Sequence record: NC_042136.1
DNA length: 64,000 nucleotides
Reading direction: 5' to 3' (one strand)
Below the pieces are notes generated by a model that worked only from the letters and a program-made list of their open reading frames with translations, did not search any database and was not told where the DNA came from. Shown here piece after piece: positions 45,669 through 64,000 of the stretch. Positions within the stretch are counted from its first letter, which is position 1, and the number at the start of each line of letters is the position of its first letter. A program made the translations under genes and the position numbers.

Positions 45669-46547
45669 ATGTTTTCTAATGCTTACGACACTTACGTCGG
45701 CAAACCATTAGCTCACCTAGATCACGTCCCATCCACTCTTAAGCGTTTATCGGTTGTCAATGACCTGTTATCACTTGGAGACGGGGTGCAAGCTATCACC
45801 CACGCTAATGGTCAAGGTATTCCTTTCCTTAACTTTCCTCTGTCCATGATTGGGTTTAACCGTAAACCAATCACCGTTATGGATGACCGTCCTTACACCA
45901 ACAAAAACGGTATTGTAACTAACTCGTCTGAACGTGTGGCTTTATTAGTAGCGGCTTTCGTTCAACAAGACATCATTGACGGTAATATGTCAGTGGTCCG
46001 TGGTACACAATCTACTGTTGCTCGCGCCTTAGCCCGTTCTTGGGGATCCCAAATCATTCGTCAGTCTGGCATCGAAGAAGATAAAGCGTTAACCGTTTAC
46101 ATCATTCTTATCCATTACTATAACTGTTTGGTGAATGGTAACGTCGGTGATATGACCTTTACTTCTCAGAATTTGTGTCAGCAAGTCATGGGTATTGATC
46201 GTAAACGTAGTCTAGAGGTCTTAGAGCAAATTGACTTCATCGATACGTTACCTAAGTTACACGATGCATTGGTGAACTACCCGGGCATGTACAAACTGAA
46301 AAACATGCAGGTGAAAGACTTGATCGCTTTAGGTCAACGTATCTGGTATTCGGCAACGGGTAAACAGATCGTTGGTGCAGGTCTAGAACACCCACCTTTG
46401 TTGATTGGTATGTGCGCGGCGACGATCGCAGATAAAAACGCGTACGGCAAAACTCCACTGGGTATGCAGTTAGATCCGAAGTACAACGAGAAAAACAACC
46501 GTGCTTTGGTAATGACCATTACTAACTCTTATCCTATCATCCTTTAA
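45669..46547 (+). CDS. Virion structural protein (phiKZ gp28-like)
   Basis: 292 aa, divergent from the sheath gene; MFSNAYDT start and GLEHPP motif. Confidence 0.6.
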   Translation: MFSNAYDTYVGKPLAHLDHVPSTLKRLSVVNDLLSLGDGVQAITHANGQGIPFLNFPLSMIGFNRKPITVMDDRPYTNKNGIVTNSSERVALLVAAFVQQDIIDGNMSVVRGTQSTVARALARSWGSQIIRQSGIEEDKALTVYIILIHYYNCLVNGNVGDMTFTSQNLCQQVMGIDRKRSLEVLEQIDFIDTLPKLHDALVNYPGMYKLKNMQVKDLIALGQRIWYSATGKQIVGAGLEHPPLLIGMCAATIADKNAYGKTPLGMQLDPKYNEKNNRALVMTITNSYPIIL

Positions 46548-46578: not shown

Positions 46579-49161
46579 ATGTTAGTCGATAATTATCGCA
46601 CCCCTTTAGCGCGTTACGCCATTAAGGACATGTATTCCAATCCCGGTACTGGTCGTCAGTTTCAATTGATGCTGACGCAAGTATCACCGGACGTGGGATA
46701 CATCAACACGTTCCAGTTCATGGGACGTTACCGCAAGACTCCGATTGAACGAGACTACTTCATGATTTACAACATGTCTGGCTTTGATGGTTCGACATGG
46801 AACTTCCATGAATTGTTCACTCGCATGGATCCGGTAGACCAATGGATTAACGTTGCGAAGATTTGTAAAGAACGAGGTATGATCATTGACATCTACGGAG
46901 ATGACGGTCGTTTATATCCTCGAGACAAATGTTGGATCATGTCAACTTATGACGGTCAACAATTGTTAGCGATACAAAAGTTGCGAGCTTTTAAACAGAG
47001 CTGGAAAGAACCTCGTTATGTACACTGTTACACGATACAAACCGAAGTTTACAATCCACTTACCAACAATCAACAATTAGACTGGCCGCGGTTCAGTTCT
47101 AACAACGATAACTCAGCGGAAGAAAAAGACCGCATGAAAATCATCTACGCAGAATACCTCAAGTTACCGGGTTTAACCTCGGTATACCTTAACGGTTATT
47201 TGTGGGATGGATTTCCAGCGGACGCTAATTTGTTAAACGCCGAGGTCATCGAGATCACTAATGACCCGAGCGTGTGGAAGACCGAGTCTTATGAAGTCGG
47301 TTCTTTGCCTAACTTCCAGTCTAAACGAGATAACGTTCGCAAGTTGATTATTCACCCCCCTAAAGTAGAAGGAGAGTTTGGTTACCAATACGTAGCTGAT
47401 GTCGCTTTCTATTTGGTGAACCGTAAACGACGTGGGGTGTATCTGAACCGTAACGAGGCGTCTCACTTCCGCCAGTTAACCCATCGCGACTACGCCGTCA
47501 GCGCATCCTTAGTGGATGATAAATCTAGCATGGAAGAATTGTTGAACGAAGATCGTCCTCAATTACTGTTAGTTTATCGCCGTAACAACTACGCTCAAGA
47601 GATTCCTTATGAGTCTAATGGTGTGCGGTGGTTGTATCGAATGAACGATGAGAACATCGTGGGAGCATTAATCGGGATTAACTCGACCATGAAAGAATGG
47701 TTAGCAGTGAATCTAGAACAATCTCCAACCAACGAGTTCTTAACGATCCCTTATAAGGACATTACTCATGAATTAGCGGTAGAGTCCATCGGCTATAACC
47801 GAGCCACACAAGTGCTGTGTGCATCGCCTATGAGTTATGACGCGTCTACTGGAATGGAGCTCGAAGTTCCGCCAGCGTGTCGTAACGAGTTAACGATGTT
47901 CGAATACGATCCTGATGGATTGTTTTTACGCATGCGTCACTTGAGTCGTGTGAACTTTGTTAAGCCGAATAGCGATGTGGGATTGGTGGAGTTCTTCCCG
48001 GGTAAGCCGGGACGTCGCATCCATGCCGAAGCCGGTCGTGGTGTAATGAACGTTGATCCCAACACGACACCGCGTTTTTACGTGCAAGCGGTAACTACGG
48101 AAGGAGAATACGCTGGGGAACGTATTCCGGCGATTGAAGGGAAAGATTACACTTTTGATCGTGATACTGGGAACGTGACATGGACGTTGTTGTCTAAGAT
48201 GTTCATTGGTGTGATATTGTACAATGACCAAACGTTGTACAAAGAGTTCACACTGGATCACATCGATAACTCTTTAACGTTCAGTATTACTCGTGAGTGG
48301 TTGCAAGGCGGGCTGTTAATGGATGTGGCTCCGGCTAACATCATGGTGATCATGAATCGACACTCCTTAATAGAGAACGTAGATTACGTAGTTGATTTCC
48401 CGGACGTTCATATTTTGAACCATCAATATTTAAAAGATGGTGGGAATGACTTTGTTCTTTATTGTAGCGAGTGGTCTCCGATCGATGACAAGACGCCTCT
48501 AGAGCAATCTGAGCTCGGTTACGTCACCGGAGGTGTAATCGGTCATAACTTACGCTATAACCTAAGAGAGGACCGTGTAACGCGAACTACGATAGATGGT
48601 AAGGTTTGGGATCCGGCTTTAGTTCCGGTGGCTGAACTTGACGCACCGTCTGAACTGCTGAATACACTGAACGGTAAACCGTATGGAGTGAAACACTGGT
48701 ATCTACCTTTACGAGATTGGGTAGCTTACGATAACACCGCAGGGTGGGAAGAAGCTCGAGACCGAGATCGTCGAATGAGTCAGTACTTGACTTTGTTTGC
48801 TAAGAAACCAGAACCAACGGTTATTCCATCTTTAATGGATAAGTACCGTGTGTTTAGTCCATTCATGAACATGGTGGTAAACCGCATCTTACTCGGTCTT
48901 TTGGAACTGGATGACCTACCTAGTGGTGAATCTTACTCTAAAGACTATGTATTGAGAAAAACGGCTGACTTCCAGTGGTTGTTAAAATACGATCCAGTAG
49001 AGCGTGACTATGACGTTCGTTATTTCGCGGTCTTCCCTTATGTCCAACAACACACAGCATTAGTGGAAGCGAAAGAACTGATTTTCATACAGCGGGTTAA
49101 CGAGGTTTTCTTAAAATCTCGTATTAATATTAATGGACACTTTGAGGTTAAAAATGTTTGA
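46579..49161 (+). CDS. Virion structural / baseplate protein (phiKZ gp27-like)
   Basis: 860 aa; FRQLTHRDY, LNRHSLIENVDY and YRVFSPF motifs; gene order gp28-27-26. Confidence 0.65.
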   Translation: MLVDNYRTPLARYAIKDMYSNPGTGRQFQLMLTQVSPDVGYINTFQFMGRYRKTPIERDYFMIYNMSGFDGSTWNFHELFTRMDPVDQWINVAKICKERGMIIDIYGDDGRLYPRDKCWIMSTYDGQQLLAIQKLRAFKQSWKEPRYVHCYTIQTEVYNPLTNNQQLDWPRFSSNNDNSAEEKDRMKIIYAEYLKLPGLTSVYLNGYLWDGFPADANLLNAEVIEITNDPSVWKTESYEVGSLPNFQSKRDNVRKLIIHPPKVEGEFGYQYVADVAFYLVNRKRRGVYLNRNEASHFRQLTHRDYAVSASLVDDKSSMEELLNEDRPQLLLVYRRNNYAQEIPYESNGVRWLYRMNDENIVGALIGINSTMKEWLAVNLEQSPTNEFLTIPYKDITHELAVESIGYNRATQVLCASPMSYDASTGMELEVPPACRNELTMFEYDPDGLFLRMRHLSRVNFVKPNSDVGLVEFFPGKPGRRIHAEAGRGVMNVDPNTTPRFYVQAVTTEGEYAGERIPAIEGKDYTFDRDTGNVTWTLLSKMFIGVILYNDQTLYKEFTLDHIDNSLTFSITREWLQGGLLMDVAPANIMVIMNRHSLIENVDYVVDFPDVHILNHQYLKDGGNDFVLYCSEWSPIDDKTPLEQSELGYVTGGVIGHNLRYNLREDRVTRTTIDGKVWDPALVPVAELDAPSELLNTLNGKPYGVKHWYLPLRDWVAYDNTAGWEEARDRDRRMSQYLTLFAKKPEPTVIPSLMDKYRVFSPFMNMVVNRILLGLLELDDLPSGESYSKDYVLRKTADFQWLLKYDPVERDYDVRYFAVFPYVQQHTALVEAKELIFIQRVNEVFLKSRININGHFEVKNV

Positions 49162-55100: not shown

Positions 55101-56605
55101 TCTTGATGAACCTACCTATCTTACCAATGGATAAAGTTCGTACTGACCGATTCGGTATCGCGGAAACAGCGGTGAGATGGGATGAGTTTGTTGCACAAGA
55201 AACCTTAGTGGTCACATTCGGTATGGTATACGAGTTCAAAGAACTTGAGTGGACTACGGTGGATGCTCCGATGCAGTACCCATCTAGCTTCGGTTCATTG
55301 AACGTTGTACGTCAAGCTGAACTACCTAACCAGTTGAACGTGAGTGGTACCATCTTGACACAAAACGGTAACCAGTCGTTTGACGATGGTTATTTATTAG
55401 TGTTCTCTAAAGAACTACTAAGCATGCAAGGTCTGGTTGGCGGTTCTTCACCAGATGGTGTGTTCAACGTGAACTACGGTCCGTTTAAAGAAGGGAACAA
55501 CAACATAGTCTTCGCGATGGACATGTACCACCAAGAAGAACAGGTCGTGTGGAATACTCGTCCTATGGTGTTGGCTGAACTTACACCAAGCGAGTTCACT
55601 ACTGATTTCTGGGCTACTGGTTCAGATTACGTGGTGAAAGGTAAAGCGCTTCAGTTGGATGGTTCTCCGTACACACCAGATGTTGCTGAAGAGTTTATCG
55701 CAACAGACACCGTGAATGGCGGGACCGTTAAGGGCACGATCGGTGTAGATGGTAACTGGTCGATCAACCTACGCAGTAATGTGGAAGGTCTAACGACTTG
55801 GAGACTGTCTCCTGTGAACGACCCTGACGTGGGCATGGGTAATGTTAACATTACTTACCACAACGGTGTGGAAATGTTCCCAGCACCATACAGTAGTTCT
55901 GAACTACACTTTGGTAAAGAAGGTACATTGGCTTACGCGTTTAAAGATGCAAACGGCGACCCTATTAAAGATGCAGTGTTCTGTGTCGCGATTAATAGTG
56001 ACGAGCCGAATGCTAAGATCAGTACGGATGATTGGGGTGTGGCAACATTCACCATCCCATACGTGGTTGATCAAGATCGTGTTACAGCTGATGCTGAATT
56101 CGCTGGTAAACAGAACCAACACGTCATTGTCTGGTCTTCGGACAGCATTCTGTTGCCGGTAGACTTTGAAGATCTAATCCGTCCAGATGGCATTGCTCTA
56201 GGTGACTTGTTCACTATTAACGGCAAAGCTATTGACCAACGTGGTAACCCGATTGATCACGGCCCTGTGGGTCTTTACGATCGTCGTACGTTTAACTACG
56301 GTCAACGAGCGGTGGATCCTTCGTCTAAACGCTTCGAGTTGGAAATGGGCCCTTGGGACCAAGCTGGTGTGAAAGAGATGATCCTTTACACTGGTTCCCA
56401 TTACGAAGTGGTGACTGTAGAGGTGATCGACGGGTTGATCAGCTTTAACCGTGTTAATGTTGATGAATCATCAAACAAATACATCTTGATTGAAAATGGT
56501 GAGGTCCTACCTAAACCGATCGACATCAAGATCACGTTAGATGGTGATAACCCGAGCGTAGGTATCGTTAACGAACAAATCTTAGTGAAAGGTGACGTAA
56601 GCTAA
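49154..56605 (+). CDS. gp26-like baseplate-region protein fused to about 1900 aa of tandem Ig-like (Big_1/invasin-type) repeats; giant fibre subunit 1 (2483 aa)
   Basis: ATG 49154 after GAGG SD. The N-terminal about 570 aa is gp26-like (YSPKLYSYP.W motif). It is followed by repeats with DQFG.P and TDxxGxAxF motifs. Confidence 0.75.
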   Translation: MFEKGLTSPTQSAIIPGAGPQLPNDNEAGRFHYIWDVYNPDTVKPGEESRYRVPKEKEVVCDPVAQQWYIVTHVNWEGDLRSTLEPIFNFGGDGNVDPLNSIFGLPAGYQGEAIVGIDYSVRPNRAVVDGQVMAPGAAYALLYEGNTVGENGKVISVVYGSNGEMISNRIPAGLAAHHSLTNKEIMVTQPFSVNRNAEELPDGSRVTLVWFDHAGNMIPKARSLSVQHTAMLRDHQVGKRYIRKVQLVAPWFLNSGDPKTLNVPVNTVLQNLAFRAIVHYSDGSKSEELPIDGQKVILYGLNEHKPSTPGQRGTLTLVYNLDADEHIYEAQPGNPNQFRDSYSLLAVDFNGAYSPKLYSYPTWVNGQYQLKHYLTDLDRSFIIDATDHVRINELSPAFRPTTYGVEQTIELNLRLSDVVPTFEPMIMRQSTTFILKAPGNEDGSKFDVRYSYDQRAYNDPTFKAVNQADGRQQIEFGKGFESQEDWLDEVYYAVEPSYNTQREKGPIKPTHFEIEASSGKLYTYNISKWNDKLYLDVQEPQGRTIYVRWVHESIQGDRLLLATTGISIDVVEGPSSDTPVPTSIELDRSVVKKIGVNEVFSVSGVVYDQFGKPMKDGLTNLMVRGGTQHDKSPRKVAVKIDGTFRFYTWSEKALGETETIEFAFETGKAPVYILERNIDIIENEMKVGSDFYPYSPTKVGVNKPARAFGYLEDPEGKRLRDYQFYSMVGDDLDSIRVETTDENGDFLLTRFHTGDEKVAVMNIKAGGTDDVRVLTWVETESYGDRITLDQIDWTFTGTDQMSVTGRVYDQFGDLVQGVNATFGFGPLWNPANVTTTAAKGTYVLNHAYMEPGNTYDIVVWTDNDFAFGTATWEKEIIVADRIVLDSENPSEAPAGTTVSISGKLVDKDGNDFVSESQTPIKVTRLGSGESELIYAGLDGRFETQVGPFKDWEVTTFLFELTGKAPVTHTITWMGEPARLDNLKFDAGLPRETKIGLPALLQGETVDQHGKLFAPGNEFEFDVEYGDGNVAKAHSLGDGRWTFHASSDVEGDVQFTFKSNTRVVGTFTVKFEGEIFIHPLPNVDINYRIPVGETMTIGWYVVDETGAAMVGQRIDIVQRLPVEKDLGYGVTDKYGKFEYTVPYYQTNFGEIHGYAGVKEAKVELIWTEEKDIAHTISSFNAPQFVYNGVTPLVRAVVTNEDDEPLPMGRLMCYSRDDYSLIELTPYDPDNLPPAHDLNEWGGVLGNGEQAFWVEPLPEGKHNLVFFSECDTKVWPITWRVYDKVLSRIDLAPDTATKALTPVDAPTVYIRGTGITGDESVYQPSAPKALTWEGSDGTTGDIEIDTDGSVGYYIHGVKGSGTVVYTIKDGTRILATFEIEYINGTLVELPYSQTMRYNGESARVAWGVRDEHDQGVAGLTLLKAINPEANEVYTNGITDEWGIMELVLTGDDAVPGSTKVTASFDNDLPSKQLVDTPVVLSGTSKVIETTSGEAKVLVKMEPSVQTVTWFDSGVTDPLMANVTDVTFIDTIGYGQGDVRVTTGVKSVIGETRPTDNFVVFDKGSFDYVDCGTKGEGDVRPNHYEFNEDGSLELNITGGPKWDGTRHLMFATGYDIREETIEWVGEAEPVTGLRVLPYSNTSQAYESDGFVAIAAIGLSGKGVPNIPVTINLRYDGLQPQTVLTDEFGIAEFIIPDNDENPKEVQWGGETQMRPVYWDGDIKVLAKYTPDHNVEHVINWTQGSAGLITTLRWLDYTDVVGKDSEGVITAATLDARDQFTPLTGLSAFNKKTLKDVELTTHDVINGLYYAHISSQSTGDHDIAFYTPALQFTRKLTWEDVTATHWDAIGWKIPTDAEEIVGTGGPTTVDGMLMKWTPETGEQRMRIKGPVQVDYRRTDDVEFGKVWALPDGTVSIPVNQSAEGQWYYSFVNNGQDVATKTVKFVERLRVAYAPYSHHVGLVGGEFFVAAYVVDEDGKGLPNATVPFFLMNLPILPMDKVRTDRFGIAETAVRWDEFVAQETLVVTFGMVYEFKELEWTTVDAPMQYPSSFGSLNVVRQAELPNQLNVSGTILTQNGNQSFDDGYLLVFSKELLSMQGLVGGSSPDGVFNVNYGPFKEGNNNIVFAMDMYHQEEQVVWNTRPMVLAELTPSEFTTDFWATGSDYVVKGKALQLDGSPYTPDVAEEFIATDTVNGGTVKGTIGVDGNWSINLRSNVEGLTTWRLSPVNDPDVGMGNVNITYHNGVEMFPAPYSSSELHFGKEGTLAYAFKDANGDPIKDAVFCVAINSDEPNAKISTDDWGVATFTIPYVVDQDRVTADAEFAGKQNQHVIVWSSDSILLPVDFEDLIRPDGIALGDLFTINGKAIDQRGNPIDHGPVGLYDRRTFNYGQRAVDPSSKRFELEMGPWDQAGVKEMILYTGSHYEVVTVEVIDGLISFNRVNVDESSNKYILIENGEVLPKPIDIKITLDGDNPSVGIVNEQILVKGDVS

Positions 56606-56650
56606 GAGTAGTTATCCGTAGGTGACATACTACGGCATCGTCCATAATCT

Positions 56651-56680
56651 TAGGGGGAATTCGTTCCCCCTATTCATTCA
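56651..56680 (+). terminator. UUCG hairpin with weak U-tract between fibre genes 1 and 2
   Basis: TAGGGGGAA-TTCG-TTCCCCCTA followed by TTCATTC. Confidence 0.55.
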
Positions 56681-56734
56681 ACAAACCATGATGTCAACAA
56701 AAGAATTTAATTAACCTAATTAACGGAGTTAATA

Positions 56735-59700
56735 ATGATTGGGATTATTAAGGGTAATATACTGGATGCTCGGGGAGAACCTGTTGTTCCCGGAGAACCA
56801 GTGACCATTACCGGTGTCCGTAGTGATGGTGGGGATGATATCTCTATCATTACCGACAATGACGGTAATTGGTCGTTTAACCTGTCTTCCGAAGCGGTAG
56901 GTGCGTGTGATATCACATTCATGTACAACGGTTTAGAAGTTGGTTCCTATGAAGTTTACTTCGTAGACGACTTGGATTTAAAAGTCCTTCCTTATTCAAC
57001 AACTTTGGTTCATGCGGACCACAGCGCTTTAATAGCTTTCGCAGTAACTGACCCTGATGGTAAAGGTGTCCCTAATGCTCCTGTAACGTTCTATGACGAC
57101 TCTTCGTCCCCTGAACCGACCATGACTATTAATACTGACCGTTTCGGCATAGCAGAGTTCCTAGTGAGTTCTACCGAGGTTATGGGAGAACGTAGCTTTA
57201 ACGCTACTATCGGTAAAACGATGACCAAGCACACGGTAGAGTGGACGACGACGTCTGACTCTTTGGTGTACTCGTTCAGTGAGTTCATGCACACGGAAGA
57301 AGTAGAGACCGGGAATCAAGGTGTGCTTTCAGCTTACGCTTTGGACCAAACTGGTGAGCGCGTACTTTATCAAGGTCAGTACCGATTGTTCAACAAAACC
57401 ACATTAAGTGATGTGGGGTTAGAACGATTAACTAACCGAGACCATCGTGAGTGTTTATCTACGTCAGTATTAAGTGACGGTGAATATCGTTTTTGTGTTT
57501 ATGCTGATAACGCTCGTAAAGACGTTTCCATGACTTGGCAAGATCTTGCTTCCAGTGAGATCGCTAAATTCGAAGAAGTTTCTGGTGCTTCGGTTTATCC
57601 TACCAATTACCCGTCAGTGGTTAAGTTCAACGGCTTGGATTATGAGTTAGAACCTATCACAGTTCGTGGTAAGATTGTAGTGACAGAACTCATCGACGGT
57701 GCTACCAAGGGTAACGATGCGATAGTCTTACCAGACGGGACAGTGGATTTCTTTAACTATTCTGAAAGTGAAGTAACACAAACCAGAAAAATCAAAACCG
57801 CGGACTGGACGTCGGCTTTACAACAATACGAGTTCCGTGATGGATTAAGCATCCGAGCGTGTGAATACAGTAATGACCAAATCCCCACTGGCGAAGATGG
57901 TTTTGTAGTATTCGCAGTTACGGATACAGATGGAAAAGTGGTTCCTGACGCGGCAGTCAAATATACGTTCACTAACGGCGACACGGGTTACACTAGCGCT
58001 TACGATGGTGGTTTCCTCCGTTTTGATATTTCTCAGGATGGGAATGAAAATCGTACCTATGAAGAAGTCAGTGTTTACATCGGTACATCTAAAGCGGTGG
58101 CGGGTGCTTATTGGCGTCCTACTAGCGTTCCTGTTGGTGTTAAATTCGAAGAAGTAGTTTTTCCTACTGAGTCTAAAGATAACGTCGCTATGACGATTAC
58201 AGGGCTTTTGAAGGATCAAAACGACACTCCTATTAAAGATACTAAGTTGGGTATCTTTAACGTATCAACTTTAGCCTACGAAGAGTTTGGTAAAAACGGC
58301 GCTATTGGTGACGACGGTCGTTTTGAAATAGAGTACGGTCCTTTGTCGATAGGTGAACATGAATTGATTCTTACCGCTAACGCGGTAACAGAACATCATG
58401 ACACTACTTGGATTGACAGTGTTCCTGCATTTGATGGCTTCCAACCATTACCATGGATGACAAACTCTACCCCAGAAAACACCGAGGCAATGATTGGTGT
58501 TGCTGCTCGTAAAGAAGACGAGTCTTTAGCCGCAGGTGTTCCTGTAACATTCTACCGTTCAGACTTTAATCAAACGGTGGGTGAAGAACTGGGCACAGTG
58601 ATGACCAATGAATTCGGCATTGCTGAATTTAAAGTGACTGAAACAGAACCATTAACCCAAGCGTTTGAAACCGTTTACTACTTAGCGAAGTACAAAGACA
58701 AACAAGTAAGTCTGAGTTACACTCGTACCAACGTGAGACCTACAGCGGTTGAGATCACTGATTTCTCCATCAACGCTGAAACCCAAGTAGGTAAGAAAGC
58801 GGTAGTGAAATGTACGATAGTAGATAAACTTGGTACACCAATGACCAGCCTTCAAGGCTTACAAGTTTACCACTTACCTTCGTTTAAGTCTCTTGATGTT
58901 TCTAGCCCTGACATCGGTTATGACGCCACTGGTATCTACGCTATTGAAACCGCCGAAACGTTCGGTGATTACAAACTGGAGGTTGGAACACACCCTATGG
59001 TCATGTGGCATCGTAGCTCCAATGCTCGCGTCTATTTTGATCTGGTTGTGGTGGATGAAGCTGATGTGGTTAAACCAGCAAGCATCGTACTGACTGAAAA
59101 TGCACCTACTGTGGGTATGGTTAATGATAGCGGTTCATTCCCTATCATGGCACAAGCTCAAGACGCCGATGGTAATCCGTTCAAACCGGCTTATGGTATC
59201 CAAGTGGCTATCAGTCGTAAGATGGATGGTGTGGATTACAATGGCGGTTATGCGTACATCGGACCTAACGGTGAAGTGTATGGTAATGTAACCCCAGCCG
59301 CTGACGGTGACTTTACGTTCTGGTTCGAAGACCAAGACTACGATGGTGATCAAGGTGAGAACTACGGTGAGTTCAACATTACGTTCCGCGATGACTTGTT
59401 GGTAGAAATGTCCAAAGCAACTACTGAACATATCGCACACGGTGAACAAGCAACCTTGGTCGCTCGTGCTATGAACCAAGTACATCAAGGTGTTGAGAAT
59501 GTTTGGGTGGACTTCACTTCAGAAGAACTCTACGGTAACGTAAGCGGTGGTACGTCGGATAGTCGTGGTTACGCCATGGGTAAAGTTTCCGAAGCGTACA
59601 CAGTGTCTCTGACCGATCCTGAGATGATCACGGTGAAAGCGTCACTCGCTGACACCGTTGTGTCTGAAGAAGGGGTCGTAGTCACTTGGGATAGTGAAGT

Positions 59701-61894
59701 TAAACCGGTCGTGTTAACTAATGTTGTGGTTCCTGATACCACACTTCCTAACAAACCAGTAAGTGTCATCGGTAATGTGGAAGATGCAGACGGTAATCCA
59801 CTTGATGAAGTTGTCGTTACGATTACCGACAAATTCAGTGGCCGTGATTACGTGACCCCACCTACTGTCGAAGGTGAGTTCCGTATCGACATCATTCTGG
59901 TAGAAGAAGGTGATCACGACTTAATCATTAGTGCAGGTAGTGCGTTAGTGAACGAAAGCATTAAAGTGGAACTGGTCATCCCAGACTACGATAATGTTGA
60001 GAAACTACCGTTCTCTACTCAACGATCGGCAACCGGTGGTGAAGTCTTCCTAGCGTTTAAAGCAACGAATCAAGGCGCTGGTGTTCTAGACTTACCAATC
60101 GATCTTTACATCCAAGGTACTCCTCAACCGGTACGTAGTTCTTACACGGACGACCGTGGTTATGGTGCACTGTCATTTAGCTTAACTGAACCAAGTTCAA
60201 CGGTACTACTAGAAGCTAAAGTGGGTGAAGATCTCATCGGTTACTACGAGGTTAACTTTACGGACGATCCAGTAAGTAGTAATATTGCTGAAGCATTGAA
60301 CTCAGAACCTACGGTTAATGGTGAGTCAATGTTGTTCGACATCACCATCACTGACCAGAACGGTGCGGTAGTGGTTGACCCTGTTATTGGTGCTTACGAC
60401 TTCACTAACATGGAACCATTGACCATTACAGCGGATACTAACCAACACGGTCGTGGGTTGTACGTGATCGACGGTATGACTGATACATCTATTGATGTGA
60501 TGATCTATACTGAAAACGCTCACCGTCCAGTGATCGCTACTTGGTCACCAGAAGAACCTAAGGTTTACCAAACCATTGTTCTCGATGAGTACGAAGCAAA
60601 CCCAAGTGAAGGTGAAGAAGTTGAACTGACCGGTCATCTGTTAGGGGTCGATGATGAATTGATTAAACCTAACACTATCCTAGTCGCGAAACTCACGGAT
60701 ACGGATGGCGGTGAAGTTCTAAGTACGTTGGATACGGATGGTGTGTTCTTGTTCCCTCTAAGTTACGCGGAATACACTAAGAAGACCTACACCGTGAGTG
60801 TAGGTGAAGTATCAACAGAACCATTTGATATCGAATGGGGTCACTTAGATCCTCCAGTCTACACCAGCATCGAGTGGGTAGGTGAACAACCAGCGAATGG
60901 TGAAGTCGGCACTCCGGTGACACTACGAGCTCGTTCACTAGACCAATACGGTGATCCAATTGAAGGCGTGTCTGTACGTCCATTCATTAACGGTGAACCG
61001 GGTAATGCGTTCCGTTCTCCTCCGGGTGGTGAGTGGTCGTTCGACTACAACGCTACCGAAGAAGGTGACGTGGTCTATGAATTCGGTTGGGACCCGGATA
61101 TCGCTCACATCAGTCATACGGTAACGTGGGCATTACCTGAACCTATCTTTACTAAGATGGAATTGGTGAGTGCGCCTACTGAAGGCACCACAGGCGAAGA
61201 CGTAGTGATTACGGTTAAAACCCTAGATCAGTTTGATCGTCCTATGGCAGGTCAATCTGTAGCATGGTCTGACGGTGGCACTAACTTACCGGCTAACACC
61301 AGTGACCCAGATGGTATCGCGACGTTTACTGTAAACGAAGCAGATGCTGGGGATGTCACTTACACGTTCATTGGTGGTGGTGAAGTTCTTAACCTGACTC
61401 ACACCGTAACATGGACTGCTCCTAAACCAGTATCTACGACTATCGAAGTAAATGGTCCGGACACAGCAGTCATTAATGAAACGGTTCCTGTACAAGTGAT
61501 CGTGAGAGACCAGTTCGGTCAACCTATGTCTAACGTCAGTGTGGTGTGGAATGATGGCGGTATTCCGTTCCCTCAATCCATGACTGACGCTGACGGTCAA
61601 ATCACGTACCAGTTGACTCGTGATAAGGAAGAAGTAGTGACTTACTCTTTCAACGCAGGTCAAGGTGTTAACGCACAACACGTGATTAGTTGGGTGAGTA
61701 ACATCCTTCCAGCGGAAGGGTTAGCGATTCAACCAATCGAAATACCAGTAGCATTAGCGGGTCAGTCATTCACTATTTCAGGTGAAACTACTGATCGTGT
61801 TATCCCACCAGCGGAAAGCATTACTATTGATGAAATGGACGTTCCTGTAGGCACTACGACAGGCACAGTTACTATCACTGGTGACGCTTCTTAA
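56735..61894 (+). CDS. Tandem Ig-like repeat protein; giant fibre subunit 2 (1719 aa)
   Basis: GGAG SD; repeated TDxFGxAEF, DQFxxPM and DxxGxP motifs; very acidic. Confidence 0.8.
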   Translation: MIGIIKGNILDARGEPVVPGEPVTITGVRSDGGDDISIITDNDGNWSFNLSSEAVGACDITFMYNGLEVGSYEVYFVDDLDLKVLPYSTTLVHADHSALIAFAVTDPDGKGVPNAPVTFYDDSSSPEPTMTINTDRFGIAEFLVSSTEVMGERSFNATIGKTMTKHTVEWTTTSDSLVYSFSEFMHTEEVETGNQGVLSAYALDQTGERVLYQGQYRLFNKTTLSDVGLERLTNRDHRECLSTSVLSDGEYRFCVYADNARKDVSMTWQDLASSEIAKFEEVSGASVYPTNYPSVVKFNGLDYELEPITVRGKIVVTELIDGATKGNDAIVLPDGTVDFFNYSESEVTQTRKIKTADWTSALQQYEFRDGLSIRACEYSNDQIPTGEDGFVVFAVTDTDGKVVPDAAVKYTFTNGDTGYTSAYDGGFLRFDISQDGNENRTYEEVSVYIGTSKAVAGAYWRPTSVPVGVKFEEVVFPTESKDNVAMTITGLLKDQNDTPIKDTKLGIFNVSTLAYEEFGKNGAIGDDGRFEIEYGPLSIGEHELILTANAVTEHHDTTWIDSVPAFDGFQPLPWMTNSTPENTEAMIGVAARKEDESLAAGVPVTFYRSDFNQTVGEELGTVMTNEFGIAEFKVTETEPLTQAFETVYYLAKYKDKQVSLSYTRTNVRPTAVEITDFSINAETQVGKKAVVKCTIVDKLGTPMTSLQGLQVYHLPSFKSLDVSSPDIGYDATGIYAIETAETFGDYKLEVGTHPMVMWHRSSNARVYFDLVVVDEADVVKPASIVLTENAPTVGMVNDSGSFPIMAQAQDADGNPFKPAYGIQVAISRKMDGVDYNGGYAYIGPNGEVYGNVTPAADGDFTFWFEDQDYDGDQGENYGEFNITFRDDLLVEMSKATTEHIAHGEQATLVARAMNQVHQGVENVWVDFTSEELYGNVSGGTSDSRGYAMGKVSEAYTVSLTDPEMITVKASLADTVVSEEGVVVTWDSEVKPVVLTNVVVPDTTLPNKPVSVIGNVEDADGNPLDEVVVTITDKFSGRDYVTPPTVEGEFRIDIILVEEGDHDLIISAGSALVNESIKVELVIPDYDNVEKLPFSTQRSATGGEVFLAFKATNQGAGVLDLPIDLYIQGTPQPVRSSYTDDRGYGALSFSLTEPSSTVLLEAKVGEDLIGYYEVNFTDDPVSSNIAEALNSEPTVNGESMLFDITITDQNGAVVVDPVIGAYDFTNMEPLTITADTNQHGRGLYVIDGMTDTSIDVMIYTENAHRPVIATWSPEEPKVYQTIVLDEYEANPSEGEEVELTGHLLGVDDELIKPNTILVAKLTDTDGGEVLSTLDTDGVFLFPLSYAEYTKKTYTVSVGEVSTEPFDIEWGHLDPPVYTSIEWVGEQPANGEVGTPVTLRARSLDQYGDPIEGVSVRPFINGEPGNAFRSPPGGEWSFDYNATEEGDVVYEFGWDPDIAHISHTVTWALPEPIFTKMELVSAPTEGTTGEDVVITVKTLDQFDRPMAGQSVAWSDGGTNLPANTSDPDGIATFTVNEADAGDVTYTFIGGGEVLNLTHTVTWTAPKPVSTTIEVNGPDTAVINETVPVQVIVRDQFGQPMSNVSVVWNDGGIPFPQSMTDADGQITYQLTRDKEEVVTYSFNAGQGVNAQHVISWVSNILPAEGLAIQPIEIPVALAGQSFTISGETTDRVIPPAESITIDEMDVPVGTTTGTVTITGDAS

Positions 61895-61926
61895 CATTAA
61901 CTCGTAAAGGTCAGCCTTTACACAAC

Positions 61927-61969
61927 ACCATAACTCGGAGTACCTGACTCCGAGTTATGGTTATTTTTT
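61927..61969 (+). terminator. Strong intrinsic terminator between fibre genes 2 and 3
   Basis: 14-bp stem CCATAACTCGGAGT / ACTCCGAGTTATGG followed by TTATTTTTT. Confidence 0.8.
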
Positions 61970-62015
61970 GAAATTGTATGACTGGTTTTAAAGTCTATTA
62001 AAAACGGAGAGTCTA

Positions 62016-64000
62016 ATGGCTAATACGAATACAGGTGTCGGTCCTCGTAAACTCACTATGAAACGTAGTGATGGGAAACCAGACACGGACATCATTAGTG
62101 ACGCTAATGGTAAGTGGTCCATCGATGTAGGTAGCGAAGGTAAAGGTAAAGTTACTTTCCAATTCTTCAGTGGTGAAGAAAAACTCGGTGAACAAGAAAT
62201 TAACTTTGTTCAGAAAACAGATCTCCTAGACGGGTTTGATAATCTGTCAACGAAAAACTACAGCAACGTTAAAGGGTTGGTCCTCAATGACAAACTCGCT
62301 CCTATCAGTGATGTAGTACTGGACTTCTCTTACAGTGTAGATGGCGCAGCCGCAGTAACAGGTAAGACTTACCCTTCTTCTAACACTGGTCTATTTACTT
62401 TCAGCTTACCTACTGATGAAATGGTCGGTAAAAGTAAAGTAGAAGTGACCGTGACTTACGATGGGACTACAGCTACTCGCACATTTGATTTAGTGGACGA
62501 ATACTTACCCGCTAACTTCGCCACACTTCACGCTCCCGTCCAAGTGCGTCCCGATGAGACAATGACGGTGTACGGTAAAGCTTTCTACGATTACAACGCT
62601 CTGCCTTTGTTGGGTCCAAGTCGTAAGTTGTTTTACTTTGACAAACACCCAGCGATGATGCACGACGTTACCGATGCACTAGAAGACAACGGGTTCTTTA
62701 AACTAGAAATTCCGGCCACCGGTTACTTTAGCGTAATCAACAATGGCGGAGTTACACAACAAGGTATTAACGTGGTTAAGGAGCTTACTCCTCCACACTT
62801 GTTCCGTGTTGCTCCTCGTAGCTTGATGATCTTTGATAGCAGCTGGGCGGGTTCTTCATCAGAATGGTGGGGTCGTGTTTTTGATGAAAACGGTAACACT
62901 CCTAATCTGATCAACGGCAATGTGGTTTGTGCTGACTTGCGTATGTCTCGTCAATACAAATCGGCGTCATTCAACAGTGACGGTTCGGTCGAGAACTGGT
63001 TAAGTGTAGATGAAGATGCGAAAAACCCTTACTGCTTTGTGGACGGTCGCATGGTTCTACCTAACATGACTCGTTACAACCACAGTGGTGACATGTTTAA
63101 CCTAGCCGCTGGGACCACTAACTGGGTTCGCGCTGGCAAACCAGTGGTTAACGCCTTTGCTTATACCGACGAAGTGAGTATTCCTAAAGCAGGCGTTTCC
63201 GTTAAACTAAGTTCTATCGAGAACGGTGTTCGTACTGAAATCGGCACAGCGGTAACTGACAAATACGGCGTGGTCAAGTTTGATGTTCCAGCACGTGAAG
63301 AACCTACTCGTTTAGAGATGGTAGCGGAAGCTGGTGAATTCGAATTGTTCTTTGTGAACGACTGGGTGGATCCAGCTAAATTCAAAGTGGCTACTGACAT
63401 CACGTTGCCATTCATTCCGCCGATCTATTTCGATGGTTACATCCAAATCAACTTTGATCCTATCGACCAAAACGGTGAGCGATTCAACTTGGATCCTCAA
63501 ATCACTTATGAAGGGATGCACATGCAAATTCGTGACTATCCGTTCTTCCGTCCTTACTTGGACTTAGGTGACAACCAAGGCCGTTACATGTTCTCACTGC
63601 AATCAGCACAAGACAAGTTCCCTAGTCGTACTCGTATTGCGATGACGTGTGATGAGCTGAGTGTGGAGAAAGATTTGGTCATAGGTTCAGCAGAAGGTAT
63701 TAACCCGTTGATCTATGCAGCTGGCGCTGGCGTGGCAGGTTTCCCTATCACCGCAGGTTGGCGCATCCTAGATGTGAATAAAGCTCCGTTGTCTGGTAAA
63801 ACGGTTAAAGTTTGGTACGATAAAGTAGAAGGCGAGCCAGCTCATACTTTGACCACGGACAAATACGGTAGTGTATTGGCGGACATTCCTTGGAAACCAC
63901 TAAACTATACTCGTACCATCATTATCCAATCTGAAGGTGATGAGTTCACACAACAACTAATGTGGACTAAGAAACCTACGGGTAGTGAAATCGATCTACG
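62016..64000 (+). CDS. Tandem Ig-like repeat protein; giant fibre subunit 3, runs off the window (not in ORF track)
   Basis: ATG 62016 after GGAG SD; hand translation is open to base 64000 (MANTNTGVGPRKLTMKRSDGKPDTDIISDANGKWSIDV...TDKYGVVKF...TDKYGSVLA...). Confidence 0.85.
   Translation, partial: MANTNTGVGPRKLTMKRSDGKPDTDIISDANGKWSIDVGSEGKGKVTFQFFSGEEKLGEQEINFVQKTDLLDGFDNLSTKNYSNVKGLVLNDKLAPISDVVLDFSYSVDGAAAVTGKTYPSSNTGLFTFSLPTDEMVGKSKVEVTVTYDGTTATRTFDLVDEYLPANFATLHAPVQVRPDETMTVYGKAFYDYNALPLLGPSRKLFYFDKHPAMMHDVTDALEDNGFFKLEIPATGYFSVINNGGVTQQGINVVKELTPPHLFRVAPRSLMIFDSSWAGSSSEWWGRVFDENGNTPNLINGNVVCADLRMSRQYKSASFNSDGSVENWLSVDEDAKNPYCFVDGRMVLPNMTRYNHSGDMFNLAAGTTNWVRAGKPVVNAFAYTDEVSIPKAGVSVKLSSIENGVRTEIGTAVTDKYGVVKFDVPAREEPTRLEMVAEAGEFELFFVNDWVDPAKFKVATDITLPFIPPIYFDGYIQINFDPIDQNGERFNLDPQITYEGMHMQIRDYPFFRPYLDLGDNQGRYMFSLQSAQDKFPSRTRIAMTCDELSVEKDLVIGSAEGINPLIYAAGAGVAGFPITAGWRILDVNKAPLSGKTVKVWYDKVEGEPAHTLTTDKYGSVLADIPWKPLNYTRTIIIQSEGDEFTQQLMWTKKPTGSEIDL

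What the first reader, a model, noticed from the sequence alone, without database searches (positions are those of the whole stretch)
56510..62213. Candidate new system: Ig domains split across gene boundaries, linking three giant proteins into one fibre
Gene 1 ends ...KITLDGDNPSVGIVNEQILVKGDVS*, only the first two strands of an A domain. Gene 2 starts MIGIIKGNILDARGEPVVPGEPVTITGVRSDGGDDISIITDNDGNWSFNLSSEAVGACDITFMYNGLEVGSYEVYFV, the rest of an A domain, followed by the expected B domain. Gene 2 ends ...SITIDEMDVPVGTTTGTVTITGDAS* at the same register. Gene 3 starts ...KLTMKRSDGKPDTDIISDANGKWSIDVGSEGKGKVTFQFFSGEEKLGEQEINFV, homologous to the gene 2 N-terminus. Both upstream proteins end G-D-(V/A)-S and have an extra partial A-strand just before. 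Two breaks at the same point in the fold, each with its own SD, argue against random fission. The simplest model is donor-strand-like complementation, as in chaperone-usher pili: each C-terminal strand pair completes the next subunit's N-terminal Ig, giving an ordered, swappable fibre of more than 4800 aa. Alternatives are RNA-level joining or recent fission.
Basis: partly seen in the sequence, partly recalled or inferred. Interest (0 to 1): 0.85.

Follow-up and report, generated by a model that had tools for sequence, protein, structure and literature searches.

The report
Phage fibre genes, domain split between genes
A giant Vibrio phage encodes a row of long bead-on-a-string fibre proteins; each later protein starts with the same small domain lacking its first two strands, and the baseplate-anchored first protein ends in an unfolded strand pair that could supply them, so the proteins may clip together much as pilus subunits do, though this is inferred and not shown.

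Summary
The window is the first 64 kb of Vibrio phage VP4B, a phiKZ-like jumbo phage. The quoted sequences, coordinates and ribosome-binding sites are correct.

Genes 1, 2 and 3 are intact, separate genes. They belong to a row of five Ig-repeat fibre genes, and the row is conserved in 13 related genomes and contigs.

Gene 1 is the homologue of the phiKZ peripheral-baseplate protein gp26, extended by about 1,900 aa of Ig-like domains. Every later gene begins with one special "head" domain. It matches Big_1 positions 24-93 of 93, so it lacks the A/A' strands. It occurs only at N-termini (23 of 23).

The 56-aa end of gene 1 is predicted unfolded. Its first half is conserved across two genera. In Aphroditevirus the stop and start fall exactly in the A'-B loop, 10 nt apart.

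This supports a split domain at the gene 1/gene 2 boundary, probably rejoined by strand complementation. It is not shown.

The strict chain is weaker. The gene 2 tail is absent in phiKT1028, and genes 3-5 end in complete domains. Tail-to-strand sequence similarity is marginal.

Sequencing error, recent fission and RNA joining are excluded.

Verdict: partly supported; a new variant of a known kind.

The parts
45669..46547 (+). gp046, homologue of phiKZ gp28 (Pfam PhiKZ_VTX); first gene of the conserved block downstream of the tail sheath gene
   Evidence: Pfam PF25614, E 1.2e-27; same position in all relatives
46579..49161 (+). gp047, homologue of phiKZ gp27 / Goslar gp220, the scaffold of the outer peripheral baseplate
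   Evidence: PDB 9xqd_G, E 7.8e-47, and 11pb_C, E 1.8e-58; role taken from PMC13250141 and PMC13742148
49154..56605 (+). Gene 1 (gp048, 2483 aa): an N-terminal phiKZ gp26-like peripheral-baseplate module (residues about 39-564), followed by at least 15 Ig-like (Big_1/MG-type) domains and a 56-aa unfolded C-terminal tail
   Evidence: PDB 9xqd_a (PHIKZ026), E 4.3e-61; PHROG and Pfam matches; 15 profile-matched domains; AlphaFold2 model of residues 1840-2483
56435..56602 (+). Gene 1 tail (residues 2428-2483). The first strand-turn-strand motif H1 (56438-56500) is conserved across both genera. The second motif H2 (56516-56602) is variable and present only in Tidunavirus
   Evidence: pLDDT 29-35 with no secondary structure. 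It lies where the paralogous stretch of gene 2 starts its next domain (alignment A4). The last 30 aa are only 40% and 27% identical to pTD1 and phiKT1028, whereas H1 is kept
56651..56672 (+). G+C-rich hairpin in the 129-nt spacer between genes 1 and 2, terminator-like with a poor T tract; the GGAG of gene 2 lies at 56725-56728
   Evidence: the hairpin is kept with compensatory changes in the lgnC, pTD1, lgnB and phiKT1028 loci
56735..61894 (+). Gene 2 (gp049, 1719 aa): the head domain, at least 14 Ig-like domains and a tail of about 63 aa. Its first 620 aa are a colinear paralogue of gene 1 residues 1864-2483
   Evidence: AlphaFold2 model of residues 1-300; the fold search returns tandem Ig/MG arrays such as invasin 1cwv, SbsC and alpha-2-macroglobulins
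56735..56965 (+). Head domain of gene 2 (residues 1-77): a Big_1/CarboxypepD_reg-like beta-sandwich that starts at strand B and has 6 predicted strands
   Evidence: Pfam register; SusC N-terminal domain 9hfj_A, E 1.5e-3; strands at 2-8, 24-29, 36-39, 45-51, 56-64 and 67-76, pLDDT 66-78; it is the most conserved part of gene 2 (84% and 69% identity against 67% and 37% overall)
61703..61891 (+). Gene 2 tail (about residues 1657-1719): two strand-turn-strand motifs after the last complete domain
   Evidence: the last full profile match ends at residue 1666. The tail is kept in pTD1, lgnB (whose gene 2 is 2897 aa) and lgnC, and is absent in phiKT1028. No structure model was made of it
61927..61971 (+). 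Strong intrinsic-terminator-like hairpin (15 pairs) followed by a T run, in the 121-nt spacer between genes 2 and 3; the GGAG of gene 3 lies at 62006-62009
62016..64000 (+). Gene 3 (gp050), cut by the end of the window; it is 1630 aa in the phage record. Its short-form head occupies 62016-62225. The protein ends in a complete domain with no tail

Best explanation
The region is the fibre module of the peripheral baseplate of a phiKZ-like jumbo phage.

SHOWN.
- Gene 1 is the baseplate-anchored stalk: a gp26-like anchor followed by a string of Ig-like beads.
- Genes 2 to 5 are separate polypeptides. Each begins with one dedicated head domain, an Ig-like sandwich without its A/A' strands, and this head is found only at N-termini.
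- The gene boundaries are old and conserved.
- The tail of gene 1 is not a folded domain.

INFERRED.
- The head is the attachment module of every distal fibre protein.
- The conserved orphan A-turn-A' motif at the end of gene 1 docks into the head of gene 2 by beta-strand complementation. This rebuilds in trans a domain that the gene boundary splits.
- The polarity is that of type V pili: a C-terminal donor fills the place of an absent N-terminal strand.
- In Tidunavirus the extra motifs on gene 1 and gene 2 may offer further docking sites. That would give a branched or serial assembly rather than one obligatory linear chain.
For: - Anchor. Gene 1 residues 39-564 match phiKZ gp26 (9xqd, E 4e-61). 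gp047 matches gp27 and gp046 matches gp28. In phiKZ these proteins build the outer peripheral baseplate, where the fibres dock (PMC13250141).
- Head. 23 of 23 N-termini of genes 2-6 score 73-104 bits on one profile. The best internal domain scores 30 bits.
- Head distribution. A search of 1.84 billion representative proteins found true heads only at the N-termini of proteins of this phage group.
- Missing strands. The head covers Big_1 positions 24-93 of 93. It has 6 strands, against 8 in domain 2 and 9 in its internal paralogue, which has two extra N-terminal strands.
- Tail. Residues 2428-2483 have pLDDT 29-35, while every domain in the same model scores 70-94.
- Exact split. In 7 Aphroditevirus-type genomes and contigs, gene 1 stops right after an A-turn-A' motif and gene 2 starts 10 nt later at strand B.
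- Co-conservation. The motif (about 50% identity between genera) and the head (47-51%) stand out against about 24% in neighbouring domains.
- No fusion. No fused gene 1+2 exists among long gp26-like proteins, which come only as 1576-1587 or 2481-2486 aa.
- Modularity. The body of VP4B gene 5 equals the middle of Aphroditevirus gene 3 (30% identity over about 690 aa). So fibre genes split and fuse, and each free polypeptide carries a head.
- Precedent. In the same phage family, head-to-tail filaments joined through an intermolecular beta sheet have been proposed on the peripheral baseplate (Goslar DUF7941, PMC13742148).
Against: - No contact between tail and head was computed or observed.
- The tails resemble A strands only weakly in sequence.
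- The head aligns from position 2 of CarboxypepD_reg, and with a SusC N-terminal domain solved as an isolated 85-aa protein. A six-strand sandwich may be stable alone.
- The lower pLDDT of the head (66-78) is shared by its internal paralogue, which does have A/A' strands. It is therefore not a sign of incompleteness.
- Donor motifs are too few in most lineages: one motif for two heads in Aphroditevirus, and at most three for five heads in phiKT1028.
- The alignments behind the models are shallow (5 and 7 sequences).
- I had no coordinates, so strand pairing could not be inspected.
Confidence: 0.5

Rival explanations
1. Shared N-terminal anchor, no strand donation. The head is a complete small sandwich that docks each fibre protein directly on the peripheral baseplate, or heads dock on one another, as the similar N-terminal segments of the phiKZ gp131 paralogues do. 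The tails are flexible ends or leftovers of domain duplication and play no part in joining.
For: - The head is present on all of genes 2-6, whether or not the upstream protein has a tail.
- The head matches CarboxypepD_reg from position 2, and a SusC N-terminal domain solved on its own.
- phiKZ fibre paralogues share N-terminal segments that co-assemble at the baseplate (PMC13250141).
- The last 30 aa of gene 1 are its least conserved part.
- Gene 1 residues 1864-2483 and gene 2 residues 1-620 are colinear paralogues, so a duplication could have left a truncated domain.
Against: - It does not explain why the orphan motif at the end of gene 1 is conserved across genera at twice the identity of its neighbours.
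- It does not explain why the Aphroditevirus stop and start sit exactly in the A'-B loop, only 10 nt apart, in all seven genomes and contigs.
- A 22-aa strand pair that cannot fold alone is unlikely to be kept without a partner.
Confidence: 0.3
2. One reading: an ordered linear chain, gene 1 -> gene 2 -> gene 3, in which each C-terminal strand pair completes the N-terminal domain of the next subunit, giving one fibre of more than 4800 aa.
For: - In VP4B, pTD1 and two related contigs, both gene 1 and gene 2 end in strand-turn-strand tails and both downstream genes start with heads.
- The gene 2 tail is kept even where the body of gene 2 has grown by 1171 aa (lgnB).
- In the five-gene phages there are four such motifs and four heads.
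Against: - phiKT1028 gene 2 and Aphroditevirus gene 2 end in complete domains, yet gene 3 there has the same head.
- VP4B genes 3, 4 and 5 end in complete domains, yet genes 4 and 5 have heads.
- The similarity of the gene 2 tail to A strands is not significant in pTD1, lgnB and lgnC (54-72 of 400 shuffles reach it).
- No structure model of the gene 2 tail was made.
Confidence: 0.2
3. Artefact or recoding: the stops are sequencing errors or a recent fission, or the genes are joined by readthrough, frameshifting or splicing.
For: Only that in VP4B the spacer between genes 1 and 2 is a multiple of three (129 nt).
Against: - The same boundaries occur in 13 independent genomes and contigs.
- Spacer lengths are 98-129 nt in Tidunavirus and 10 nt in Aphroditevirus, in different frames.
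- The spacers between genes 1, 2 and 3 hold 2-5 stops in the upstream frame.
- In Aphroditevirus, two stops in the gene 2 frame lie just before its ATG.
- Every gene has its own Shine-Dalgarno sequence, and terminator-like hairpins lie between genes.
- No Rfam family matches, introns included.
- Long gp26-like proteins come in two fixed sizes.
Confidence: 0.02

Closest known systems
Type V pili of Bacteroidota (FimA/Mfa1): protease-mediated strand exchange
   Same: The polarity of the proposed joint is the same. C-terminal donor strands of one subunit take the place of an N-terminal strand that the acceptor sandwich lacks. The link is non-covalent and head-to-tail (PMC13655056).
   Different: In pili the N-terminal strand is first present and is then cut away by a gingipain. 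Here it is absent from the gene. The pilins are lipoproteins with a different two-domain fold, and no Pfam match links the two. Pili are homopolymers, whereas here the joints would connect different giant proteins.
Chaperone-usher pili: donor-strand complementation and exchange
   Same: An incomplete Ig-like fold is completed by a strand from the neighbouring subunit.
   Different: Pilins lack the C-terminal G strand and receive an N-terminal extension, which is the opposite polarity. They need a periplasmic chaperone and an usher, and no counterpart of either is expected or seen in the phage module.
DUF7941 filaments of Chimalliviridae (Goslar gp22/gp23, phiKZ gp126/gp127)
   Same: The phage family and the place on the virion (peripheral baseplate) are the same. 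Head-to-tail assembly is proposed through a disordered stretch of one protomer that adds to a beta sheet of the N-terminal domain of the next (PMC13742148).
   Different: The domain family differs: no DUF7941 match was found in genes 1-5. Those proteins are small and abundant and form homo- or hetero-polymers. Here there are five giant Ig-repeat proteins.
phiKZ fibre paralogues gp131, gp133, gp134 and gp135, which share N-terminal segments
   Same: Consecutive paralogous fibre genes share an N-terminal attachment part and differ distally. They dock on the outer peripheral baseplate built from gp26, gp27 and other proteins (PMC13250141).
   Different: The phiKZ N-terminal segments form a helical bundle, not an Ig-like sandwich. 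The phiKZ gp26 is 552 aa and has no Ig string.
Invasin/intimin-type Big_1 arrays and bacterial alpha-2-macroglobulin MG domains
   Same: The fold and the tandem arrangement of the beads are the same: Pfam Big_1, Invasin_D3, MG4 and bMG3, and Foldseek hits to 1cwv, 5a42 and 4u48.
   Different: Those arrays are single polypeptides with complete domains. None has a domain divided between two genes.

Membership tests
phiKZ gp26 family (outer peripheral baseplate protein) | Sequence homology over the whole gp26 chain | tested here: met
   Gene 1 residues 39-564 match 9xqd_a residues 22-545 of 552, E 4.3e-61; PHROG 3430, E 8e-145
phiKZ gp26 family (outer peripheral baseplate protein) | Conserved neighbourhood with gp27-like and gp28-like genes next to the tail sheath gene | tested here: met
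   the same order in all relatives
Big_1 (PF02369), invasin-type Ig-like domain | Match to the full profile above Pfam's gathering score | tested here: met
   Met for whole proteins: gene 2 scores 128.9 bits and gene 1 56.8 bits against a cut-off of 34.9. The head alone scores 21.7 bits, below the cut-off, and covers only profile positions 24-93 of 93
CarboxypepD_reg (PF13620) | Match to the full profile above the gathering score | tested here: inconclusive
   The head scores 23.6 bits against a cut-off of 32.3 and covers positions 2-65 of 82, so the last strand of that model is not covered. SusC N-terminal domain 9hfj_A, E 1.5e-3
Chaperone-usher donor-strand systems | The acceptor lacks the C-terminal G strand and the donor is an N-terminal extension | tested here: not met
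   The heads lack N-terminal strands, and the candidate donors are C-terminal tails
Chaperone-usher donor-strand systems | Dedicated chaperone and usher genes | not tested
   Only the proteins of the fibre module and some large ORFs of the window were scanned. None matched such families
Type V pilus strand exchange | C-terminal donor strands that are unfolded or releasable in the free subunit | tested here: inconclusive
   The gene 1 tail is predicted unfolded and has alternating hydrophobic residues. Binding was not tested
Type V pilus strand exchange | FimA/Mfa1 pilin fold, lipoprotein signal and proteolytic removal of the N-terminal strand | tested here: not met
   No pilin family appears among the Pfam matches. 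The heads begin at Met1 with no leader
DUF7941 fibre proteins of Chimalliviridae | Presence of the DUF7941 domain | tested here: not met
   It is not among the Pfam matches of genes 1-5 at E <= 0.01
Ig-like domains added to phage structural proteins by programmed frameshift (recalled from memory: Fraser et al. 2006) | An open downstream frame that overlaps the end of the upstream gene and is reachable by a shift | tested here: not met
   The upstream frame holds stops in 17 of the 19 spacers. In Aphroditevirus, two stops in the gene 2 frame lie directly before its ATG

The most novel reading that the evidence does not exclude
A phage-encoded strand-complementation system that needs no chaperone or protease. 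Orphan C-terminal A-turn-A' motifs on the baseplate stalk, and in Tidunavirus also on gene 2, act as plugs. A dedicated N-terminal Ig-like head without A/A' strands acts as the universal socket. Giant Ig fibres could then be swapped, split and fused as modules and still mount on the virion. In VP4B-type phages there are four motifs and four heads.
Probability: 0.3. Interest if true: 0.75.

Novelty: new variant of a known kind. Interest (0 to 1): 0.55.

Why it matters
The outer baseplate and fibres are the least resolved part of phiKZ-like phages. Both recent virion structures leave them largely unmodelled (PMC13250141, PMC13742148).

A conserved socket-and-plug joint would explain three things:
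- how very long Ig-like fibres are mounted on the virion;
- why these genes can be cut and pasted between lineages without losing assembly;
- where to look for host-recognition modules.

It would also add a natural split Ig domain with type V-pilus polarity, occurring outside bacteria.

If the rival explanation holds, this is an ordinary case of paralogous fibre genes sharing an N-terminal anchor.

Tried and rejected
- No two-chain prediction is available, and no model coordinates are returned. Strand pairing and exposed surfaces could therefore not be examined.
- Pfam gives nothing meaningful for the tails alone: one chance-level hit for gene 1 (E 0.12) and no hit for gene 2.
- A search of IMG/VR with the head alignment returned only the six known isolates.
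- The search of 1.84 billion representatives returned mostly generic Big_1 adhesins, whose many repeats add up to high scores. Reading twelve of them showed only two new true heads, both N-terminal.
- Counting motifs against heads fits the five-gene phages (4:4). It fails in phiKT1028 (at most 3:5) and Aphroditevirus (1:2), so I do not rely on it.
- Published accounts of pVa-21 and of phiKT1019/phiKT1028 describe no fibres.
- I considered intermolecular isopeptide bonding of the SpyTag kind and dropped it, because the heads have no invariant lysine.
- Recoding, an intron and sequencing error were rejected.
Full report
IDENTITY AND CONTEXT

The window is identical to bases 1-64000 of Vibrio phage VP4B (KC131130 / NC_042136). 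VP4B is a 236-kb jumbo myovirus of the genus Tidunavirus, subfamily Gorgonvirinae, isolated on Vibrio harveyi. Published comparisons place it among distant phiKZ relatives (PMC6034870).

The finding lies in a row of plus-strand genes just after the minus-strand tail tube and sheath genes. The row is:
- gp046, 292 aa;
- gp047, 860 aa;
- gene 1 = gp048, 49154-56605, 2483 aa;
- gene 2 = gp049, 56735-61894, 1719 aa;
- gene 3 = gp050, from 62016 and cut by the window end, 1630 aa in the record;
- outside the window, gene 4 (975 aa) and gene 5 (759 aa), followed by the large terminase.

CHECK OF THE OBSERVATION

Genes 2 and 3 each have a GGAG 6-7 nt before the ATG.

The 129-nt and 121-nt spacers each hold a stable hairpin. 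The second has 15 pairs followed by a T run, which is a textbook intrinsic terminator.

The genes are whole and separate. The row is conserved as follows:
- the same five-gene row in pTD1 and in a VP4B-like Logan contig; two further Logan contigs that carry only part of the row show the same boundaries;
- a six-gene version in phiKT1028;
- a three-gene version (1576-1588 aa, 3522-3908 aa, about 2550 aa) in USC-1, Aphrodite1, 2 TSL-2019, PDCC-1, phiKT1019 and two further contigs.

Spacer lengths and frames differ between relatives. All but two spacers hold 1-6 stops in the upstream frame, and every spacer longer than 20 nt has a hairpin with compensatory substitutions. Rfam finds nothing in the region. 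Error, recent fission and RNA-level joining are therefore excluded.

WHAT THE PROTEINS ARE

Gene 1 residues 39-564 are homologous to phiKZ gp26 (PDB 9xqd, E 4e-61). gp047 is homologous to phiKZ gp27 (E 8e-47). gp046 is homologous to phiKZ gp28 (Pfam PhiKZ_VTX).

In the phiKZ virion atlas, gp26 and gp27 build the star-shaped outer peripheral baseplate on which the fibres dock. There are five gp26 per lobe, six lobes, and the gp26 termini cross-link the parts (PMC13250141). The Goslar structure confirms the gp27 homologue in the spokes. It also notes that the peripheral baseplate and fibres remain largely unmodelled (PMC13742148).

phiKZ gp26 has 552 aa. VP4B gene 1 continues for about 1900 more residues. 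These residues, like the whole of genes 2-5, are tandem Ig-like domains:
- Pfam matches Big_1, Invasin_D3, MG4, bMG3 and CarboxypepD_reg;
- my own iterated profile finds 7-15 domains per VP4B protein;
- the AlphaFold2 model of gene 2 residues 1-300 matches invasin, S-layer SbsC, bacterial alpha-2-macroglobulin and titin arrays.

THE HEAD

All of genes 2-6 in all relatives begin with one homologous domain of about 70-77 aa. In an alignment of 17 heads, the invariant columns are M1, R29, D31, D35, G44, W46 and F76 in gene 2 numbering.

A profile built from that alignment scores 73-104 bits at 23 of 23 N-termini. It scores at most 30 bits at any internal domain of the 33 proteins.

A profile search of 1.84 billion representative proteins found true heads only at residue 1 of proteins of this phage group. 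Two were new, of 3712 and 1825 aa. The internal hits I read were ordinary Big_1 adhesins whose many repeats sum to a high score.

The head is the best-conserved part of gene 2. It is 84% and 69% identical to pTD1 and phiKT1028, against 67% and 37% overall, and 47-51% identical to Aphroditevirus, where the two proteins are about 24% identical over their colinear length.

The register of the head:
- it covers Big_1 positions 24-93 of 93 and Invasin_D3 positions 27-96 of 98;
- it starts at position 30-33 of my profile, while internal copies start at 1-25;
- the model has six strands, against eight in the next domain. That next domain begins with two short extra strands;
- the closest internal relative of the head, gene 1 residues 1864-1951, also has two extra N-terminal strands.

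So the head lacks the A and A' strands that its internal cousins have.

Against reading this as incompleteness:
- the head also aligns from position 2 of CarboxypepD_reg;
- it aligns with a SusC N-terminal domain that was solved as an isolated 85-aa protein;
- its moderate pLDDT (66-78) is shared by the internal paralogue.

THE TAILS

After its last complete domain, gene 1 has 56 residues (2428-2483) and gene 2 about 63. Each stretch reads as two strand-turn-strand motifs with alternating hydrophobic residues.

In the model of gene 1 residues 1840-2483, every domain has pLDDT 70-94. The whole tail has pLDDT 29-35 and no secondary structure. It is not a domain and does not pack on its neighbour.

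In the colinear paralogue (gene 1 residues 1864-2483 against gene 2 residues 1-620, 24% identity), the tail lies where gene 2 begins its next domain.

Sequence similarity of the tails to the A-strand part of the profile is weak. The number of shuffles out of 400 that reached the observed score was:
- 3 for VP4B gene 1;
- 20 (last 30 aa) or 6 (last 53 aa) for VP4B gene 2;
- 54-72 for gene 2 of pTD1, lgnB and lgnC;
- no signal for Aphroditevirus gene 1.

In VP4B the last tail strand aligns with the same profile positions as the first head strand. The halves therefore overlap rather than abut.

THE TELLING COMPARISON

In all seven Aphroditevirus-type genomes and contigs, gene 1 ends directly after one such motif. 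In USC-1 the protein ends FVNFDSVGIDESSNRVALITK. The TAG stop overlaps an AGGA, and the ATG of gene 2 follows after 10 nt in another frame, with two stops in that frame just before it.

Compared with internal junctions, which run strand G, then A, loop, A', short loop, B, the stop and start fall exactly in the A'-B loop.

The same motif is the first half of the VP4B tail (ISFNRVNVDESSNKYILIEN). It is about 50% identical between the genera, where the flanking domains are about 24% identical.

Long gp26-like proteins come only in two sizes, 1576-1587 and 2481-2486 aa. No fused gene 1+2 was found.

A short orphan strand pair that cannot fold alone is conserved, and it lies next to a conserved domain lacking just those strands. 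This is best explained by the two meeting in the virion.

WHAT DOES NOT FIT A SIMPLE CHAIN

- phiKT1028 gene 2 and Aphroditevirus gene 2 end in complete domains, yet their gene 3 has the head.
- VP4B genes 3, 4 and 5 end in complete domains, yet genes 4 and 5 have heads.
- The count of motifs against heads is 4:4 in the five-gene phages, at most 3:5 in phiKT1028, and 1:2 in Aphroditevirus.
- If gene 1 is present in many copies, as gp26 is in phiKZ, different heads could share the same plug. That is conjecture.
- Fibre genes are clearly reshuffled. VP4B gene 2 is colinear with the first 1672 aa of the 3529-aa USC-1 gene 2. The body of VP4B gene 5 equals USC-1 gene 3 residues 1269-1949 (30% identity). 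One pTD1-like contig has a gene 2 of 2897 aa with the same head and the same tail. Each free polypeptide carries a head.

MECHANISM AND COMPARISON

The most likely account has four parts, marked by how well each is supported.
- Shown by homology: gene 1 is the baseplate-anchored stalk.
- Inferred from its exclusive N-terminal position and its conservation: the head is the attachment module of every distal fibre protein.
- Inferred: the conserved motif of gene 1 completes the gene 2 head by strand complementation.
- Open: the extra Tidunavirus motifs may add further joints.

The polarity matches type V pili, where C-terminal donor strands replace the N-terminal anchor strand of the acceptor (PMC13655056). 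It does not match chaperone-usher pili.

Within the same phage family, Goslar DUF7941 proteins are proposed to form head-to-tail filaments through an intermolecular beta sheet at the peripheral baseplate. That is a different domain but the same idea.

The main rival is a plain shared N-terminal anchor, like the N-terminal segments of the phiKZ gp131 paralogues, with the tails playing no part in joining.

LIMITS

- The decisive computation is a two-chain complex prediction. I could not run it.
- No model coordinates were available.
- The alignments behind the models hold only 5-7 sequences.
- The gene 2 tail was not modelled.

VERDICT

I rate it a new variant of a known kind: phage fibre paralogues with a shared N-terminal adaptor, here an Ig-like domain apparently split across a conserved gene boundary.

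Noticed in passing
window 56606-56734 and 61895-62015; L001-L004, L009 and L010 spacers: Every intergenic spacer of the fibre row longer than 20 nt, in all relatives examined, carries a strong stem-loop. The stems differ in sequence but keep their pairing. Only some are followed by a T run, so they may be terminators, attenuators or RNA-stability elements.
   Followed up: partly
window 54743-56602 against 56735-58594: The last 620 aa of gene 1 and the first 620 aa of gene 2 are colinear paralogues (24% identity, six domains in the same order). This points to an old block duplication across the gene boundary.
   Followed up: partly
L001:31955-34231 (VP4B gene 5) against L004:24738-32390 (USC-1 gene 3): The body of gene 5 (residues 60-745) is 30% identical to residues 1269-1949 of the 2550-aa Aphroditevirus gene 3, while VP4B gene 3 matches that protein's first 1150 aa. 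One gene in one genus therefore corresponds to two head-bearing genes in the other.
   Followed up: partly
L009:13144-21837: A pTD1-like metagenomic contig has a gene 2 of 2897 aa instead of 1726 aa. The head and the C-terminal tail are the same, so about 1170 aa of domains were gained or lost in the middle.
   Followed up: no
window 56819-56839 (gene 2 residues 29-35) and the same columns of all heads: The heads share the invariant residues R29, D31 and D35, with G32 nearly invariant, in a loop that the internal domains lack. This could be a metal site or a contact site.
   Followed up: no
window 11508-18623, minus strand: A 2371-aa ORF has a Glyco_hydro_19 (lysozyme/chitinase-like) segment near residue 2100. 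It is probably the counterpart of the large tail-associated cell-wall hydrolase of phiKZ-like phages (phiKZ gp181, recalled from memory).
   Followed up: no
window 49133-49161: The mechanical ORF of gene 1 starts at 49133, but the record annotates 49154. Either start overlaps the end of gp047 (49161), and the same 8-nt overlap with the annotated start is seen in all relatives.
   Followed up: no
L004:24420-24590 (C-terminus of USC-1 gene 2): Aphroditevirus gene 2 ends in a complete domain that is among the more head-like internal copies (19.5 bits on the head profile). A head-like domain thus sits immediately before the true head of gene 3.
   Followed up: no
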